A stretch of 64,000 bases of DNA from Octopus sinensis (GCF_006345805.1 NC_043021.1:14260001-14324000); one strand, 5' to 3'. Positions 26,501-32,500 are shown, numbered from the stretch's first letter. Numbers and translations: made by a program. Notes: generated from the letters alone by a model not told the origin.

Positions 26501-29500
26501 CAATTTCAGCTTGTAGATATCAGTGTGAATGCACAAGAACACCCTAAGATATTTGGGTGAAACTACACACATACTAGTGCAGGCCTAAACCCAACATAGA
26601 TAAGTCTTAGCATGTATTTTTGCTACTATAGACATTTTTTTTCATAAATATGTAGACTAAGAAATAGACAAAAATAAGGTGTTGGTCACTGTTGTGACAC
26701 CTTTTCTTTCCCCATCCATCCCTGCAATCTATGCACTGGTATGTTGTCTCTCATTCATCCTTCTATTGTATCATCCCTCATACCTTGAAAACCCATTCTG
26801 AGACTTCGTCACTGCTGTCCAGCCTTACCCCCAACCACCCTCTTTCCTAAAATGCGAGTAGTCATTCCTCTACAGCAAGAAATCTATTCTGCTCTGACCC
26901 CTTCTCTCATAGTTTATTAGTCTCTACCCCTTATTCTCCTAGCTTAAAGTCCACCCCACCAAACCCGCACAGGGTTCATAGTCATGCAAGCTGCTTGGCA
27001 ACTGTGCTAGTGCTAATGCCATGAAAAAAAAAAACACCCAGTACACACTGTAATGGGATTGGTGTTATGAAGGGCATTCAATTGCAGAAACAATGCCAAA
27101 TATAGTGGAGCATGATGCAATTCTTGGACTCATTGAATCCTGTCAGACTGTCCAACCCATGCCAGGATAGAACATGATAAAGAGGAAATAGAAAGAGAGA
27201 ACAAAGTTGTTAGATATTCAATATTTCCATGCAAACATGCGTGGCATGGGTTTTATTTATTTTTTTTTTTAAGAAAGGAGTTGGCCTTCCTACCGCTATT
27301 CATTGAAATATCAAGCAGTAAATAAATAATAACATAACGAGTTATTATCTAGATATCACATGCAAGCAAGAAAGCATACCACACGAGGAGGAGGAGAAGA
27401 AGGTGAGAGGAGTTGCAGGAAGGGGCCAGAGAAGATGAGGGAGGAGGCATAAAGATGAAGGAAATAAAATGTAGCTCGCAATAATGGTTGAATAGATGGT
27501 TATCTTATTGTCTGAAAGTAGAGATTAAGGACCCTGAGTTTATAAATTATCTAGAATATACCAAGAAAAAAAAAAGAATAGAAGGTGAGGAGATGGATAT
27601 AGTTAACTTATAACTCAAATAATATTTTAAATATTTATAGAAAAAAAATTGAAGTATCTTTCTATAAAACTTTATGATATTAGCTGAATCCTAGAAGAAT
27701 TTAACTCAATCCTGAAGAATCCAAAATCAAAATATAGAACCAATACATGTATATTATGACACAAAAAGGTTTCGATTGAACAAGAAAACTAGGAAAATAT
27801 TCCGAGGTTAAAATATAATAGAAAAAAAATGAGAAAAGAGGAATAGGATAAATTCTAGCAGAATACGTTTGTAAAACAAAGATATGGTTTTGTTTCCTTT
27901 CTCATATCATGTCATATTCTTGAAGTTCTGAGAATATTGGAAGCAACAGTTGAGTGGTGGGAATGGAAGGAAAAAAAAGTTTATATTTTATGGAAACTTA
28001 AAAAGGATTTTGTATAAGAATAATAATAGTAGTAATAATAATAATAATAGTGATAGTGAATATAACTGAATCACATCCCCTTCGTGATTAGGTTACTGAC
28101 GTTGACGATCACTTCACACAAACTTCCTGCAAGACAGCCAGGTGTGGGACACAGACTCCTTACCTATTTAGAGCGTTCAGCATTTCAATGACGACGAGTA
28201 CAGACAAGGCCATGGTTTTAGGTTCAGGCGATTCAAAGATGTCACAGTCGATGCCTTTGAAACGGCCCTCCTGTGCCGGACACTGAGAGTGATGGGTCTA
28301 AAGAAATAGTATTAATGAATATTAAGGAGTTAGTAGAATTCATTAAAATAGTGAAAAAAAAAAAAAAAAAAAAAAAATCAAATTGGTTTCAATTAAAAAA
28401 AAAAAAAAATCAATCCATCACCCTCTGTTGGGCTTCGTTAACATCTGCTCTGGCAGAAAAAACTTGCGCAGTAATGTTGACAAATGATTATTATTATTAT
28501 ATTATTATTATTATTATTATTAATATTTTTCTCTTCACTCTCGTGTCCGTTGGTAGTAACAGCAGCTGCCGCGATCAGATTAATAGGATGTGAAAATGGT
28601 AAAATAAGTGATCAAGAGACTCAATTGAATTCCTCCTCCTGTTTCTGGCGACATCGTTGTGTAAAAGGTAAAGGGAGGGAGATGAGAATTTGGGGGTGGG
28701 ATGGGGAACTTTTTGTTTTCTCCTTTTTTCTGTTTTCCTTTCACTTTTCTCTGAAGACAAATATAGTGAAATATTACAAAGCAATGGAAGATTTTTTTTT
28801 TTTCTATTTATAATATTCATTTTTGTATCAGTTTAAAAATTTCTTATGAAATTCTTTAGAGGAACATCCAAGATGTAACAGCAGGAAGAAGAGAAGGTGG
28901 CACCAAGACCGGGCCCCTATGTTTCTTTATTGGTTCCCGAAAAGATGAAAGATTAAGCTGACCCTAGCAGCTTTTAAAGATAGAGTACAAAGACCAGGAA
29001 CAAACAACGCTGTTTATCCAATGCTCTGATTGCCAAACACACTCAAAGACATGTATGTATGTGTGTATGATACAAGAATAACCTTTAGACTTACACAGCC
29101 AAGGTTCCATTGCTTTTAAAATAATATTTCATAATATTACATTGTAACAAATACGCAGACAAGTTTTTTTCTTTTATTCTTAGAAGCCATACAAGGATTG
29201 GTTTTTAAAAAGTAACACCAGTAGATTATTTTTTAGATTATTATATATGTGTGTAAAAAATAAAATTAGTCATTATTATTATTATTATTATTATTACCAC
29301 CATCATTGTCAATTGCTATTGAGTCATGGTGGCTTCGTGTTTAAGTTTGTAAGAAACATGCATTATTTATCAGCAGAAATGCAAAGCATCAGATCAGTTA
29401 CCATGGAACATACAAGACATTCTTTCTCATTAAAAAAAGTCTTTGTTTTGGATAGATACAGTTGCACTGGTATCTATCTGGATATATATCTATACCTCTA

Positions 29501-32500
29501 CATGGATGTACATATATATCCATAACGATATAGGATTGGAGAAAGAAAGAAATCGACACTTTGTATTTCTGCCCTGACGCCTGTGTGTATGTACGCGCGC
29601 ACGCATTATATATATGATTGATTGATTGATTCTAGTTTCAGCTTATGAGCTGTGGCCATGCTGGGGCACCGCCATTATATATATATATATATGATAGTAT
29701 TATTATATATTATATAATAGAGGTGTATAAAATGAAGAACACAAGTAGTTATATATTTTTATACACTGTCATTTATGGTGAAATTAGTTATGGAAATAAA
29801 CATTAATAATATTTGTATGCTTCCAAAATAAAAGAAAGAAAAACTTGTCGGCATTATCACCATCCTCGCCCCAACTAAACTATCAGCAAACTCTGAAAGC
29901 TTTTGAAGGTTCAGTACCCAGAACCTTATCTGTTACAAAACAGAGAAAGTAAGGAAAAAAGAAAAAAAGAGAAAAATGAATTTTTCCCAAATGGGAAGGA
30001 ATGACACATGGAAGTGAACACTAAGCACCTTATCTTGAAACTCTTTCAGTTTCCAAGGACTGTAGTCTTTCAATACCAATCCTTCTAACAATAAGGCAAT
30101 GGTTCTGACATGAACAAATAGATCCAAGCTGTAACCTACCTGAACATAAGGGTAAATTTTTTTGACCCCCTCTTTCATCACGGTGTGGGGTAAGTTATAA
30201 AAATTTAAAGCCAGCTTCGTTTTGGACATGACAGCTTCTCCATTTTCATTTCAATCCACACAGGAACCTTGGGTGGTGCCTGCCCTTCTCTCTATTGTGA
30301 GACAAACACTGTCAGAAGTATTCACATTGAACGGACTCAATGTGAATACTTTCAAACAGTATTCGGATGTTGTATTGTGTACAATCCTGGATGACCTTAC
30401 ATTGCAGCAAGGAATACAGTTGAGGGCAGCAACACCAAACTCCTTCATTCACCAAATACCGAATGTAAAGGTGAGGCAAAGTTGAGCCTTGCAGGATAAC
30501 AACCAGGGGGATTCAAAACAATAGCAGGAGGGGAGAAGCAGAGAGGGAAGGAGGAACAACTACAAAGGATTCAAATCTAGCCATTCACAGTCCACTGGCC
30601 CTTAATAAATTTAAGGTCACCCACAAAAGGAGAATTCAAATGAGTTAACCATGTAAAAAGAAAAAATATATATACATAAACAAATTAGTAAGATACACCA
30701 AAAAATGAACAAAAACAATACATTAAAAGAATATAAAAAGACAAAAGAAAAAAAATTTGTTTTAAAAGTTAATTTGGAGGGGTTGGTGGTGGTTTGTGTC
30801 ACTAGGACTACACTGAGAAAAAATTACCTGTTGAGAGCATTAAGCATCTCTATGACTACCAGGACTGATAGAGCCATAGTCTTGGCAGCAGGAGCATCAA
30901 ATATACCACAGTCAATACCAGCAAATCTTGTTGGTTCAGCAGGACACTGCATGTGGTGGGTCTGTGAGAGGACAGGTCAAGTTACACCAACAGAAAGTGT
31001 GAAAATTATTTGCAGCACATATCAAATGAGGGAACAAATGTTCAAAGTTTTATTCAGAAAATCCAGCCATGGCATTTTATTTATTATCTTGATTTTTTTT
31101 TTTGATTTTTTTTCCTGTTTTGGGAGAAGACTGGTTTGGTTGAATAAGATTTGTATATATTTTCTGGACTGGCTATCAATCTCATGTTTACAATGTATAT
31201 TCAGAATACATTTATTTTTTTTGTTTTTTTTATCTACACAATATTTCAATTGTTTTTATTTTTGTTTCTTTTATCCCTTACTTGTTAGAGTCATTGGATT
31301 GCAGCCCATGCTGGGGCATAACCTTGTAGTCAAACAAATCAACCCCAGTACTTATTTTTAAGCCTGGTCCTTATTCAATCATTCTCTTTTGCAAAGCAGC
31401 TAAGTTACAGAAATGTAAACAATCAACACACACTAGTAATCAATCATTCTGTCTCTTATTTATATATAACCCATGCTAACATGGAAAACGGACATATGAT
31501 AATGATGACGATGATATATATATATATATATACAATTGCAGCGTGGAAGGTGTTTATAAGCCATTTAAGAAACACACAAAAGCCGTTCGATTCACTGTGT
31601 GTTTCTTAAATGGCTTATAAACACCTTCCACGCTGCAATTGTTTTCGTTTCAGCACACGATCTCAGATCAAATTACTTGCTATGCGAGTACATCTCCGTA
31701 TATATATATATATATATATATATATATATATATATTTGAGTGTGTGACTGTGTCTATATTTGTCCCCTGCCCACCACCGCTTGACAATTGATGTTGACAT
31801 ATTTACATCCCCGTAAGATACCAATAGAATAAGTACTAGGCTTACAAAGAATAAATCCTGAGGTCAATTTCTTCAACTAGAAAACACTCTAAGGCGGTGC
31901 CCCAGCATGGCTGCAGTCAAATGACAAACAAGTAAAAGAATATAAGTATAAAAATTCCCAACTGAAAATGTTGTCTGTACATATTGACTGTACATATGCA
32001 GATATAATTGATATATGTTTATAAAGTAGAAAGAAATATCATAAATATACACTATAAAGTCCTGAAATTCAAAATCTTATTCATAGCAACAAAAACATAA
32101 TTTGAAAGACTTAAAGATAATTCAGTAACCAATCAAACCAAGAAAGGAGAGATTGATCACCCATTATATCAAATCACTAATGATTTTTTTTATAGTATAA
32201 ATTAAAAAATAAAATACAAATAAAGAGAATGGAAATTTGGAGTCTTTGCAAGTGGTGGGAATGAGTTGGGGGGGGGGGGTCTTAACTTTTTCATATTCCA
32301 GTTCTGCTAGTAACTTTTCTGAAATATTCTATAGTGATATTTAGAAGGCAGGTGAAGTTTTAATTTGGATTCCCAGTACCCCTGAAATGAATTTTAGCAC
32401 CCCAGAATGGGAATCACTGGACCAGATTGCCGGGCCCCTTAAAATTAACCATATTGCCAGAATACATGGACTAAAAGCTGATACAGTTGGGAAACAAATT

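What the first reader, a model, noticed from the sequence alone, without database searches (positions are those of the whole stretch)
28164..30961. Duplicated, apparently mutually exclusive exons swap the SERCA luminal L7-8 loop
Seen: two 134-nt exons have identical phase and canonical splice sites. They differ at 10 of 44 aa, all within the first 26 residues (luminal loop). The last 18 aa ([18 protein letters not shown], containing the site-I Glu equivalent to E908) are identical despite many synonymous changes. Both keep the loop Cys pair (QC...DC). Since 134 is not a multiple of 3, including both or neither shifts the frame. Exon B is more charged (QEGRFK, ESPEP) than A (EPTRFA, DAPAA). Inference: both copies are under purifying selection and give pumps with different luminal surfaces from one gene. 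From memory, vertebrate ATP2A genes have a single exon here.
Basis: partly seen in the sequence, partly recalled or inferred. Interest (0 to 1): 0.8.

Follow-up and report, generated by a model that had tools for sequence, protein, structure and literature searches.

The report
Ancient alternative exon pair in SERCA
The octopus calcium pump gene (SERCA) has two interchangeable copies of one exon that give the pump two versions of a loop facing the calcium store; the pair is already annotated, but it is over half a billion years old and seems to be switched by a conserved RNA fold in the intron.

Summary
Exon A (30961-30828) and exon B (28297-28164), minus strand, are each 134 nt with AG/GT borders. 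They differ at 10 of 44 residues, all in the luminal L7-8 loop. Using both or neither gives an early stop codon.

The window matches the Octopus sinensis SERCA gene. RefSeq isoforms X1 and X2 differ by exactly this swap, so the isoform pair is already on record.

Not found in the literature I could search:
1. The same A-then-B pair, 134 nt each and intact, occurs in cuttlefish, argonaut, gastropod, chiton, brachiopod, annelid, nemertean and tapeworm genomes. It is single-copy in a priapulid, a horseshoe crab and a bird. The duplication is therefore spiralian-wide, not cephalopod-specific.
2. Exon A's donor never has G at +5 (0/9). Exon B's has it in 8/9.
3. Exon B's 5' splice site and the 95 nt after it are near-invariant in cephalopods. 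They are complementary to a conserved element 5.4 kb downstream (about 37 bp, rank 1 of 6375 windows).
4. The helix core GCAGGAAG/CUUCCUGC is present in all nine spiralian genomes, usually overlapping a UGCAUG motif.

Best reading: an ancient mutually exclusive exon pair, with exon B gated by a long-range RNA structure. The functional difference between the two loops is untested.

The parts
17499..54377 (-). SERCA (ATP2A-type Ca2+-ATPase) gene, residues ~108 to the stop of the long-tail form. There are 20 coding exons in the window, counting A and B.
   Evidence: The exon model was built by tblastn plus splice-site search and gives one open frame of 911 aa with either exon. The first 760 aa are identical to O. 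sinensis XP_029650915/6. The C-terminal part matches solved SERCA1a/2 with E about 1e-64.
35024..35109 (-). Upstream constitutive exon (end of TM7, ...GPQLNYYQL), donor CTG|GTAGGT
30828..30961 (-). Exon A (type A, ancestral-like 'HMQCPAEP'): 134 nt, good acceptor, weak donor CAG|GTAATT
   Evidence: Used in RefSeq isoform X1. Its flanking introns are not conserved between octopus and cuttlefish.
28164..28297 (-). Exon B (type B, 'SQCPAQE'): 134 nt, donor TAG|GTAAGGAG
   Evidence: Used in RefSeq isoform X2.
28298..28342 (-). Conserved intron stretch upstream of exon B, containing a perfect TACTAAC branch-point consensus (28335-28329)
   Evidence: 38/50 nt identical between octopus and cuttlefish, against 18/50 for the same stretch upstream of exon A
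28069..28163 (-). el1: a near-invariant 95-nt intron element directly after exon B. It includes the 5' splice site (helix arm H1: GGTAAGGAGTCTG, 28164-28152, which begins at the last base of exon B, 28164) and GCAGGAAGTTT (helix arm H2, 28130-28120).
   Evidence: 87/100 nt identical between octopus and cuttlefish, against 23/44 at third codon positions of the exon. Coordinates.
22745..22802 (-). el2: a distal conserved intron element complementary to el1. It carries GAACTTCCTGT (H2', 22791-22781) and AGCTCCTTATC (H1', the anti-5'-splice-site arm, 22760-22750).
   Evidence: Conserved and collinear in cuttlefish and argonaut. The duplex with el1 is -49.2 kcal/mol with about 37 bp. It ranks 1 of 6375 windows across the 64 kb. 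The homologous element is the top partner in all three cephalopods.
22678..22683 (-). TGCATG (Rbfox-type motif), 62 nt 3' of the el2 core (22745)
   Evidence: In five non-cephalopod spiralians the same motif overlaps the distal helix arm as CTTCCTGCATG (CTTCTTGCATG in Capitella).
19076..19193 (-). Downstream constitutive exon (SLSENQSL..., TM8 end to TM9). Its first base completes the AG|C serine codon.

Best explanation
Exons A and B are a tandem-duplicated, mutually exclusive exon pair in the single SERCA gene.

**What the exons encode.** Each encodes SERCA1a-equivalent residues 871-914. That is the second half of luminal loop L7-8, including the C876-C888 pair, plus the first half of TM8 with the site-I Glu. 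One and only one of the exons must be used to keep the reading frame.

**Age.** The pair arose before the spiralian phyla diverged. Both copies have been kept, at 134 nt and in the order A then B, in molluscs, brachiopods, annelids, nemerteans and flatworms. A resembles the single exon of outgroups. B is the derived type.

**How the choice is made (inferred).** The splice signals are asymmetric. Exon A has a weak donor. Exon B has a strong donor that is embedded in a long-range RNA duplex. In that duplex the 5' splice site of B and a conserved GCAGGAAGU box pair with a distal element in the same intron. This would hide B's donor by default, so that A is spliced in. Opening the duplex would release B. 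One possible opener is an Rbfox-type protein binding the UGCAUG that overlaps or neighbours the distal arm.

**Functional consequence (inferred).** The pump comes in two versions that differ in the residues around the loop disulfide. In vertebrate SERCA2 this disulfide is the target of luminal redox regulators, and the loop lies next to the SERCA2b luminal tail.
For: **Shown**
- Exon anatomy, and frame-shift with an early stop if both or neither exon is used.
- RefSeq X1 and X2 differ only by the swap.
- Cephalopod transcript contigs carry A or B, never both.
- The A-then-B pair is intact in 8 further spiralian genomes. It is single-copy in Priapulus, Tachypleus and canary.
- pN 0.05 against pS 0.7-0.8 for each exon between octopus and cuttlefish.
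- G at donor +5 in 0/9 A exons and 8/9 B exons, Fisher p = 4e-4.
- Exon B's flanks are conserved in cephalopods (87/100 nt), while exon A's are not.
- The el1-el2 duplex is -49.2 kcal/mol. It ranks 1 of 6375 windows in the window and is the top partner in all three cephalopods.
- The motif pair GCAGGAAG / CTTCCTGC lies in the intron after exon B in all 9 spiralians (1-nt variants in Capitella). It is absent in the three outgroups.
- In Octopus, chiton, Capitella, Tubulanus and Echinococcus, B's donor region has one outstanding partner, 12-26 kcal/mol better than the runner-up. The up, A and down1 donors do not: their margin is at most 6 kcal/mol in those five species and at most 10 in any of the nine.
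- On the nine-species helix alignment, 73% of cells pair, against 37-53% when the register is slid. The covariation score was reached by 2 of 500 shuffles.

**Background from papers**
- The L7/8 cysteines are redox-regulated in SERCA2 (PMC7603117).
- The SERCA2b luminal tail approaches the L7/8 helix F866-S870, directly before this exon (PMC7423393).
Against: - I had no junction-level read counts, so tissue specificity and strict exclusivity rest on annotation and assembled contigs.
- The 8-bp helix core never varies. It could therefore be a protein-binding motif that happens to occur in both orientations.
- Covariation is limited to the helix flanks and to lineage-specific 5'-splice-site arms, which I compared without a formal alignment.
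- In cuttlefish the homologous distal element is top-ranked but only 1.5 kcal/mol better than the next window. In Littorina the best partner of B's donor lies upstream of exon B.
- RNAalifold on exon B and its local flanks, in three near-identical cephalopod sequences, gave no covariation signal.
- Cephalopod A and B cluster together in a 44-residue NJ tree. Orthology of the cephalopod exons to the A and B types therefore rests on the N-terminal signature, the exon order and the donor asymmetry.
- No functional data exist for either loop variant.
Confidence: 0.8

Rival explanations
1. The conserved intron boxes (GCAGGAAGU, CUUCCUGC(AUG), and the extended 5' splice site) act as binding sites for proteins. 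The complementarity between them is incidental and is not used.
For: The 8-nt core never varies, so it gives no covariation signal. UGCAUG is a known protein-binding motif. G-rich sequence after a donor can bind hnRNP H/F-type factors (my own knowledge). Local RNAalifold gave no covariation.
Against: A protein site has no need for an exact reverse complement in the same intron, yet this is seen in 9/9 lineages. The arm opposite the 5' splice site differs in sequence between phyla and still matches its own donor, for example 19 contiguous bp in Tubulanus. Helix flanks show both-sided changes, and the true register beats slid registers. el2 is the single best duplex partner in 64 kb.
Confidence: 0.2
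2. The cephalopod pair is a separate, younger duplication (or a re-duplication that replaced an older pair). On this view the resemblance to the A and B types of other phyla is convergent.
For: In a 44-residue NJ tree, cephalopod A and B group with each other rather than with A and B of other phyla. Bootstrap support for a clade of all B exons is only 0.35. Both cephalopod exons share K897-equivalent and VVIEM.
Against: Cephalopods show the same exon order, length and phase as other spiralians. They show the same diagnostic N-terminal signatures (HMQCPAEP against SQCPAQE), the same weak-A/strong-B donor asymmetry and the same GCAGGAAG/CTTCCTG intron pair after B. Cuttlefish A against B has pS 0.41 in the loop part, whereas the octopus value is saturated. 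That points to occasional gene conversion, which would explain the tree.
Confidence: 0.1
3. One of the two exons is a decaying, unused duplicate, and the alternative isoform is an annotation artefact.
For: Some annotations list only one form, for example Argonauta with B only. Three gene models wrongly splice parts of both.
Against: Both reading frames are intact in nine genomes spanning at least five phyla. pN/pS is about 0.06 for each exon. Independent transcript contigs exist for A and for B. cDNA-derived entries of other spiralians carry A (Pinctada, Platynereis) or B (Tridacna, Lumbricus).
Confidence: 0.03
4. The duplication is an assembly or haplotype artefact in this window.
For: None found.
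Against: The copies are only 65% identical in nucleotides and lie 2.5 kb apart. The same arrangement appears in independent assemblies of eight other species.
Confidence: 0.01

Closest known systems
SCN-alpha (voltage-gated sodium channel) exons 5a/5b with conserved intronic splicing elements and Rbfox2 (bioRxiv 10.1101/2025.08.16.670673, abstract read)
   Same: An ancient tandem-duplicated, mutually exclusive exon pair in an ion-transport protein. Two conserved intron elements pair with each other, and the structure promotes skipping of the downstream copy. Rbfox sites nearby fit an 'RNA bridge' model.
   Different: Different gene and clade: vertebrate paralogues there, one spiralian gene here. 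The SERCA structure includes the 5' splice site of exon B itself, and its core is conserved across phyla rather than within vertebrates. Nothing here has been tested at the bench.
ATE1 exons 7a/7b controlled by competing and ultra-long-range RNA structures (PMC7797038, abstract seen)
   Same: Two mutually exclusive exons whose choice depends on conserved complementary intron elements, some far apart.
   Different: ATE1 uses competing alternative pairings (R1 and R4 compete for R3). Here I found one duplex, specific to exon B, and no conserved partner for exon A.
C-terminal alternative splicing of SERCA (vertebrate SERCA2a/2b; Artemia, C. elegans and pearl oyster isoforms; PMC3527596, PMC6987452)
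   Same: One SERCA gene giving tissue-specific pump variants. This gene also has it: read-through of an internal donor gives a hydrophobic TM11-like tail, and splicing gives a short DDYPGFF tail.
   Different: The published invertebrate SERCA variants are described as differing only at the C-terminus. The A/B swap is internal and changes the luminal L7-8 loop and the start of TM8. I found no paper describing it.
Vertebrate ATP2A1/2/3 paralogues
   Same: These also provide alternative L7-8 loop sequences around the same Cys pair, with an invariant TM8 Glu.
   Different: In vertebrates the diversity comes from whole-gene duplicates with one exon each (for one bird gene; otherwise my own knowledge), not from exon choice within one gene.

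Membership tests
SERCA (P-type ATPase, type IIA) | Phosphorylation motif DKTGT, hinge motif [14 protein letters not shown], and Ca2+-site residues including the TM8 Glu (E908 equivalent) | tested here: met
   CSDKTGTLT and [17 protein letters not shown] are present in the assembled protein. IEM with the Glu is present in both exons.
SERCA (P-type ATPase, type IIA) | Full-length similarity to known SERCAs and the expected Pfam domain set | tested here: met
   Top hits are all annotated SERCA and carry PF00690, PF00122, PF13246, PF00702 and PF00689. The C-terminal 157 residues align to solved SERCA1a/2 with E about 1e-64.
Tandem-duplicated mutually exclusive exons | Adjacent homologous exons of equal length and phase, each with its own splice sites | tested here: met
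   134 nt each, AG/GT borders, same phase, 77% amino-acid identity, 2530 nt apart
Tandem-duplicated mutually exclusive exons | Mature transcripts contain exactly one of the copies | tested here: met
   RefSeq X1 and X2, the UniProt pair, and 11 cephalopod transcript contigs each carry one copy. This rests on annotation and assemblies, not on junction read counts.
Tandem-duplicated mutually exclusive exons | Both copies maintained by selection | tested here: met
   pN 0.05 against pS 0.7-0.8 for each exon. Both are intact in nine genomes.
Exon choice controlled by long-range RNA pairing (RNA bridge / splice-site masking) | Conserved complementary intron elements flanking or overlapping the regulated exon's signals | tested here: met
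   el1/el2 in cephalopods. GCAGGAAG/CTTCCTGC is present in 9/9 spiralians and 0/3 outgroups.
Exon choice controlled by long-range RNA pairing (RNA bridge / splice-site masking) | Compensatory changes that keep the pairing | tested here: inconclusive
   The core is invariant. Flanks show 11 pairs with both-sided changes, and the covariation score was reached by 2 of 500 shuffles. The 5'-splice-site arms differ between phyla yet match their partners, but they were not formally aligned.
Exon choice controlled by long-range RNA pairing (RNA bridge / splice-site masking) | Disrupting the pairing changes splicing, and restoring it rescues the pattern | not testable with these tools
   Needs minigenes or antisense oligos.
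Rbfox-dependent RNA bridge | (U)GCAUG in or next to the distal arm | tested here: met
   CTTCCTGCATG in Littorina, chiton, Lingula and Tubulanus, and CTTCTTGCATG in Capitella. In the three cephalopods TGCATG lies at the 3' end of el2 (cuttlefish) or within about 115 nt 3' of it. It is not adjacent in Echinococcus. Binding itself was not tested.
Dscam-type docking site / selector system | One docking site that can pair with a selector next to each alternative exon | tested here: not met
   No conserved partner for exon A. Its flanks are unconserved. Its donor has no conserved partner, and its best duplex leads the runner-up by only 0.3-5.8 kcal/mol. No complementary 9-mer is shared by all three cephalopods, although that search required exact matches.
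Mutual exclusion by steric hindrance or U2/U12 incompatibility | An intervening intron too short to splice, or one U2-type and one U12-type splice-site set | tested here: not met
   The A-B intron is 2530 nt in octopus, and all four sites are GT-AG. The gene does have an AT-AC intron, but it lies elsewhere.

The most novel reading that the evidence does not exclude
The el1-el2 duplex is an RNA switch more than 500 million years old. By default it hides the strong donor of exon B. When an Rbfox-type factor binds the UGCAUG that overlaps the distal arm, the duplex opens and exon B is used. The switch thereby sets which L7-8 loop the pump carries. In cephalopods the B loop would be the partner of the SERCA2b-like TM11 tail, so two distant splice choices would together define a 'housekeeping' pump and a 'muscle' pump.
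Probability: 0.3. Interest if true: 0.75.

Novelty: new member of a known kind. Interest (0 to 1): 0.6.

Why it matters
The L7-8 loop is the largest luminal loop of SERCA. In mammals its cysteine pair is the target of ERdj5, SEPN1, ERp57 and TMX1, and the loop sits next to the SERCA2b luminal tail. What the loop contributes to pump behaviour is still debated.

A natural pair of loop variants, kept for more than 500 million years in one gene across at least five phyla, is a ready-made experiment. Swapping A for B in an otherwise identical pump would show what the loop does.

Intronic RNA structures conserved across phyla are rare. This one would add a clear, testable case of splice-site masking combined with an Rbfox-type motif.

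There is also a practical point. Several public gene models (cuttlefish, Batillaria, Echinococcus) wrongly splice parts of both exons and should be corrected.

Tried and rejected
- **Third exon copy, or duplicates of other exons, in the window.** None found.
- **Literature on an internal mutually exclusive exon in SERCA.** Seven of the nine full-text searches I ran (of 10 allowed) looked for this and found nothing. The one hit pairing SERCA with 'duplicated exon' concerns intron gain in vertebrate ATP2A1 at G310, which is unrelated. The C. elegans catalogue of mutually exclusive exons does not list sca-1.
- **Exact complementary 9-mers shared by three cephalopods.** None found. This test was too strict, because cuttlefish has a G-U wobble in the helix. 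The pairing showed up only after the second conserved element was aligned.
- **Small local hairpins in el1 (GTGAT/ATCAC).** Not kept in cuttlefish, so dropped.
- **RNAalifold on exon B plus local flanks.** It predicts a stem joining the 3' and 5' splice sites of B, but with no covariation. Not relied on.
- **Strict pairing of exon type with C-terminal tail across Spiralia.** Rejected, because A with a long tail and B with a long tail both occur in other molluscs and annelids. Only the cephalopod contigs show a skew.
- **The short-tail exon (DYPGFF).** Not in the window.
- **The N-terminal ~107 residues.** Not found in 54378-64000.
- **Steric hindrance as the exclusion mechanism.** The 57-nt A-B intron in Echinococcus suggested it, but I did not claim it. 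It cannot apply to octopus, where the intron is 2530 nt.

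
Full report
**1. The observation**

Reading the minus strand at the stated coordinates gives two 134-nt segments, A at 30961-30828 and B at 28297-28164. Each is preceded by AG and followed by GT.

In the same frame they encode 44 residues. These differ at 10 positions, all within the first 26. The last 18 residues ([18 protein letters not shown]) are identical, although 14 of the 16 codons that could vary do vary. 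Nucleotide identity is 87/134.

I assembled the surrounding gene from 54377 down to 17499. It forms one open frame of 911 residues with either exon. Using both exons shifts the frame and gives a stop inside exon B. Using neither gives a stop two codons into the next exon. Both stops lie well upstream of later exon junctions, so by the usual rule such mRNAs would be degraded. That last step is inference.

tblastn finds no third copy and no duplicates of other exons in the window. Alignment to solved SERCA1a places the exon at residues 871-914. The two cysteines are therefore C876/C888, and the Glu in IEM is E908.

**2. Which gene, and is the swap already recorded?**

The 760 residues encoded upstream of the exon are identical to two Octopus sinensis RefSeq proteins. 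XP_029650916.1 (isoform X1) carries exon A, and XP_029650915.1 (isoform X2) carries exon B. The two isoforms differ at exactly the 10 A/B positions and nowhere else. Octopus bimaculoides has the same two forms in UniProt.

The collection also holds full-length 997- or 1019-residue ORFs on contigs of only 3.5-5.4 kb from sequencing-run and metatranscriptome assemblies. The gene spans more than 37 kb, so these contigs must be spliced transcripts. Each has A or B, never both.

The isoform pair is therefore already on record in annotation. I found no paper that describes it. Reviews and cloning papers describe invertebrate SERCA variants as differing only at the C-terminus.

**3. Age of the duplication**

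An alignment of 101 SERCA homologues showed two recurring exon types across spiralian animals. Type A reads [12 protein letters not shown]. Type B reads TH(H/Q)(S/A)QC(L/P)(A/V)Q(D/E). Same-species pairs occur in Littorina and Mytilus. Three gene models contain parts of both types in tandem.

I then fetched genomic loci and located the exons by tblastn. The loci were:
- cuttlefish (Acanthosepion)
- argonaut
- a gastropod (Littorina)
- a chiton (Liolophura)
- a brachiopod (Lingula)
- an annelid (Capitella)
- a nemertean (Tubulanus)
- a tapeworm (Echinococcus)

All eight have A followed by B between the same two constitutive exons. Each exon is exactly 134 nt with AG/GT borders and an intact frame.

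A priapulid and a horseshoe crab have one copy, fused to the upstream exon. A canary SERCA1-like gene has one full copy. The single outgroup exon looks more like type A.

The duplication therefore predates the split of the sampled spiralian phyla. It is not cephalopod-specific.

One caveat applies. In a neighbour-joining tree of the 44 residues, the non-cephalopod B exons form a clade, but cephalopod A and B group together. In cuttlefish the loop part of A against B has pS 0.41, whereas the octopus value is saturated. I read this as occasional gene conversion between the copies. Orthology is still supported by the diagnostic N-terminal signature, the exon order, the donor asymmetry and the intron motif pair described below.

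**4. Selection**

Between octopus and cuttlefish, each exon has pN 0.05 against pS 0.71-0.80. Synonymous sites are saturated and replacement sites are almost unchanged. Within species, A against B shows saturated synonymous divergence everywhere except the cuttlefish loop part. Both copies are under strong purifying selection.

**5. Splice-signal asymmetry**

In all nine spiralian genomes the donor after exon A lacks G at +5 (GTAATT, GTAAAA, GTAATC, GTAATC, GTAATA, GTATTA, GTAATG, GTAACT, GTAACC). The donor after exon B has G at +5 in eight of nine, mostly as GTAAGG or GTGAG. Fisher p is 4e-4.

In cephalopods the introns around exon A are unconserved beyond the splice sites. Exon B sits in a conserved island. 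The 45 nt upstream include a perfect TACTAAC. The 95 nt downstream are 87/100 identical between octopus and cuttlefish, more conserved than the exon's own third codon positions at 23/44.

**6. A long-range RNA duplex at exon B**

A second conserved, collinear island lies in the same intron at 22802-22745. That is 5.4 kb downstream of exon B in octopus and cuttlefish, and 10.2 kb downstream in argonaut. It is complementary to the island after exon B.
- AGCTCCTTATC (22760-22750) pairs with the 5' splice site G|GTAAGGAGT.
- GAACTTCCTGT (22791-22781) pairs with GCAGGAAGTTT (28130-28120).
- Shorter helices lie between these two arms.

The 49 x 51 nt core duplex has about 37 bp and -49.2 kcal/mol. 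I slid a 55-nt window along the whole 64 kb on the gene strand. The distal island ranked first and second of 6375 windows, and the best unrelated window reached -41.6. The homologous island is also the best partner in argonaut and cuttlefish. Shuffled controls give z of -3.9 to -5.1.

**7. The same pairing outside cephalopods**

I searched the intron after exon B in the other six spiralian genomes. GCAGGAAG lies 34-279 nt after exon B, and its reverse complement CTTCCTGC lies further downstream in the same intron. This holds in Littorina, chiton, Lingula, Tubulanus and Echinococcus. Capitella has one-base variants (GCAGGCAG / CTTCTTGC) that still pair at 13 of 14 positions. The three outgroups have neither motif. 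A given 7-mer is expected about once per 16 kb, so this recurrence is far beyond chance in introns that are otherwise unalignable.

The helix extends differently in each lineage. In Tubulanus it is CAUGCAGGAAG with CUUCCUGCAUG. Capitella adds 8 bp on the 3' side. Echinococcus extends it on both sides.

On the nine-species alignment, 73% of cells pair in the true register against 37-53% in slid registers. Eleven pairs show changes on both sides. The covariation score was reached by 2 of 500 shuffles.

The arm that covers the 5' splice site differs in sequence between phyla, and its partner matches in each case. Examples are 19 contiguous bp from GUGAGC onward in Tubulanus, about 17 bp in Echinococcus, and GUAAGGGGCG with CGCCCCUUA in chiton.

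In Octopus, chiton, Capitella, Tubulanus and Echinococcus, B's donor region has one partner that is 12-26 kcal/mol better than the runner-up. The donors of exon A and of the two flanking exons do not have such a partner. Their margin is at most 6 kcal/mol in those five species and at most 10 in any of the nine. The signal is weaker in Lingula and cuttlefish. In Littorina the best partner lies upstream of exon B.

**8. A possible protein input**

In Littorina, chiton, Lingula and Tubulanus the distal arm reads CTTCCTGCATG, and in Capitella CTTCTTGCATG. A UGCAUG therefore overlaps the helix strand. In the three cephalopods a TGCATG lies at the 3' end of the distal island (cuttlefish) or within about 115 nt 3' of it. 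In octopus it is at 22683-22678.

UGCAUG is the Rbfox recognition motif (my own knowledge). Distal Rbfox sites brought to an exon by conserved base-pairing are known as RNA bridges (PMC8052449 and PMC10790352, listed). The closest published parallel is sodium-channel exons 5a/5b. There, two conserved intron elements pair, the structure promotes skipping of 5b, and Rbfox2 is involved (bioRxiv 10.1101/2025.08.16.670673).

**9. Proposed mechanism**

Shown:
- the exon anatomy
- the frame constraint
- the existence of both mRNA forms
- deep conservation of the pair
- the donor asymmetry
- the complementary conserved elements

Inferred: by default the duplex hides exon B's strong donor, so the exon is skipped, and exon A is used despite its weak donor. 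When the duplex is opened or prevented from forming, possibly by a protein on the UGCAUG, B's strong signals win. The frame rule then removes transcripts in which both or neither exon is used.

I put about 0.9 on the statement that this is an ancient, selected, mutually exclusive pair. I put about 0.55-0.6 on the statement that the duplex forms and controls exon B.

**10. What the two loops might do**

All differences lie between residues 874 and 896. Across phyla the type-specific positions cluster at 873-881, directly around C876.

In mammalian SERCA2 the equivalent C875/C887 pair is oxidised and reduced by luminal enzymes, and this changes pump activity (PMC7603117). The luminal tail of SERCA2b runs up to the short L7/8 helix F866-S870, which ends where this exon begins (PMC7423393).

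This octopus gene also makes a SERCA2b-like form. Reading through an internal donor at 17585 adds a hydrophobic TM11-like tail.

| Cephalopod transcript contigs | Short tail | Long (TM11) tail |
|---|---|---|
| Exon A | 7 | 0 |
| Exon B | 1 | 3 |

Fisher p is 0.024 for this table. That hints that the B loop goes with the TM11 tail. The contigs are few, related, and may be assembly mixtures. In other spiralians both exon types occur with long tails. This is a lead, not a result.

**11. Verdict**

The isoform pair is already in RefSeq and UniProt.

As far as I could establish, three things are new: the age and breadth of the pair, the conserved weak/strong donor design, and the cross-phylum intronic RNA pairing at exon B.

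In kind this is a new member of a known class, namely tandem mutually exclusive exons controlled by long-range RNA structure. It sits in a protein where the swapped segment is of real mechanistic interest.

Noticed in passing
window 38373-37453 (-): This is a U12-type AT-AC intron in the SERCA gene. The exon ends ...GCTGCCG, and the intron starts ATATCCTTTG. A branch-site-like TTCCTTGAC lies 11 nt before the terminal AC, and the next exon starts AG ATG GTT. The same ATATCCTT intron is present in argonaut, cuttlefish, Littorina, chiton and Tubulanus. The site has no intron in Lingula, Capitella, Echinococcus, Priapulus and Tachypleus.
   Followed up: partly
window 17585/17584 (internal donor GACG|GTAAAA) and 17584-17499 (-): There is an alternative C-terminus. 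Read-through encodes [28 protein letters not shown], a hydrophobic TM11-like tail also seen in 1019-residue transcript contigs. The short-tail exon (DYPGFF, used in RefSeq X1 and X2) is not in the window. It lies 19 kb downstream of the penultimate exon in argonaut and 33 kb downstream in cuttlefish.
   Followed up: partly
L004 32208-32291 and 33015-33098 (Lingula): In the brachiopod the exon upstream of A/B (end of TM7) is also present twice in tandem: [28 protein letters not shown] and [28 protein letters not shown]. This may be a second, lineage-specific mutually exclusive pair.
   Followed up: no
proteins P0001 (Acanthosepion pharaonis), P0128 (Batillaria attramentaria), P0218 (Echinococcus multilocularis): These public gene models join part of exon A to exon B in frame, using a false internal donor. 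The resulting proteins carry a duplicated loop. They are likely annotation errors caused by the exon pair.
   Followed up: partly
L002 about 52476-52559 (Littorina, just upstream of exon B): In the gastropod the best duplex partner lies immediately upstream of exon B, both for the upstream constitutive donor region (-47.7 kcal/mol, 9.7 better than the next) and for exon B's donor region. This looks like a different, docking-site-like layout in that lineage.
   Followed up: no
window about 27004-26946 (-): This region about 1.2 kb downstream of exon B is the best duplex partner of exon A's donor-proximal intron (-37.4 kcal/mol, z -5.4). It is also the runner-up partner of exon B's. It is not conserved in cuttlefish, so it may simply be low-complexity sequence.
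   Followed up: no
window 59488-60141 (-): About four tandem copies of a ~159-nt unit lie upstream of the first SERCA exon found in the window. The repeated reading frame is PALSGFSHLANNLILKLNNHLSIDLLEIATKSHPSYLLTLEHLNWPYLAQIF.
   Followed up: no
exons A and B, last 54 nt (30881-30828 and 28217-28164): The identical TM8 peptide is encoded with almost maximal synonymous difference: 14 of 16 variable codons differ, and pS is above 1 by Nei-Gojobori. This may just be saturation in a small sample. It is more than the roughly 60-75% expected at equilibrium.
   Followed up: partly
L011 8640-8660, 10061-10087, 10197-10256 (canary SERCA1-like locus): Short extra fragments matching the end of this exon (EMCNALN, TIEMCNALN) and the start of the next (SLSENQSP...) lie in the following intron. 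They may be partial duplications or an assembly problem.
   Followed up: no
window 54378-64000: The exons for the first ~107 residues of SERCA were not detected upstream of 54377. The 5' part of the gene probably lies outside the window.
   Followed up: partly
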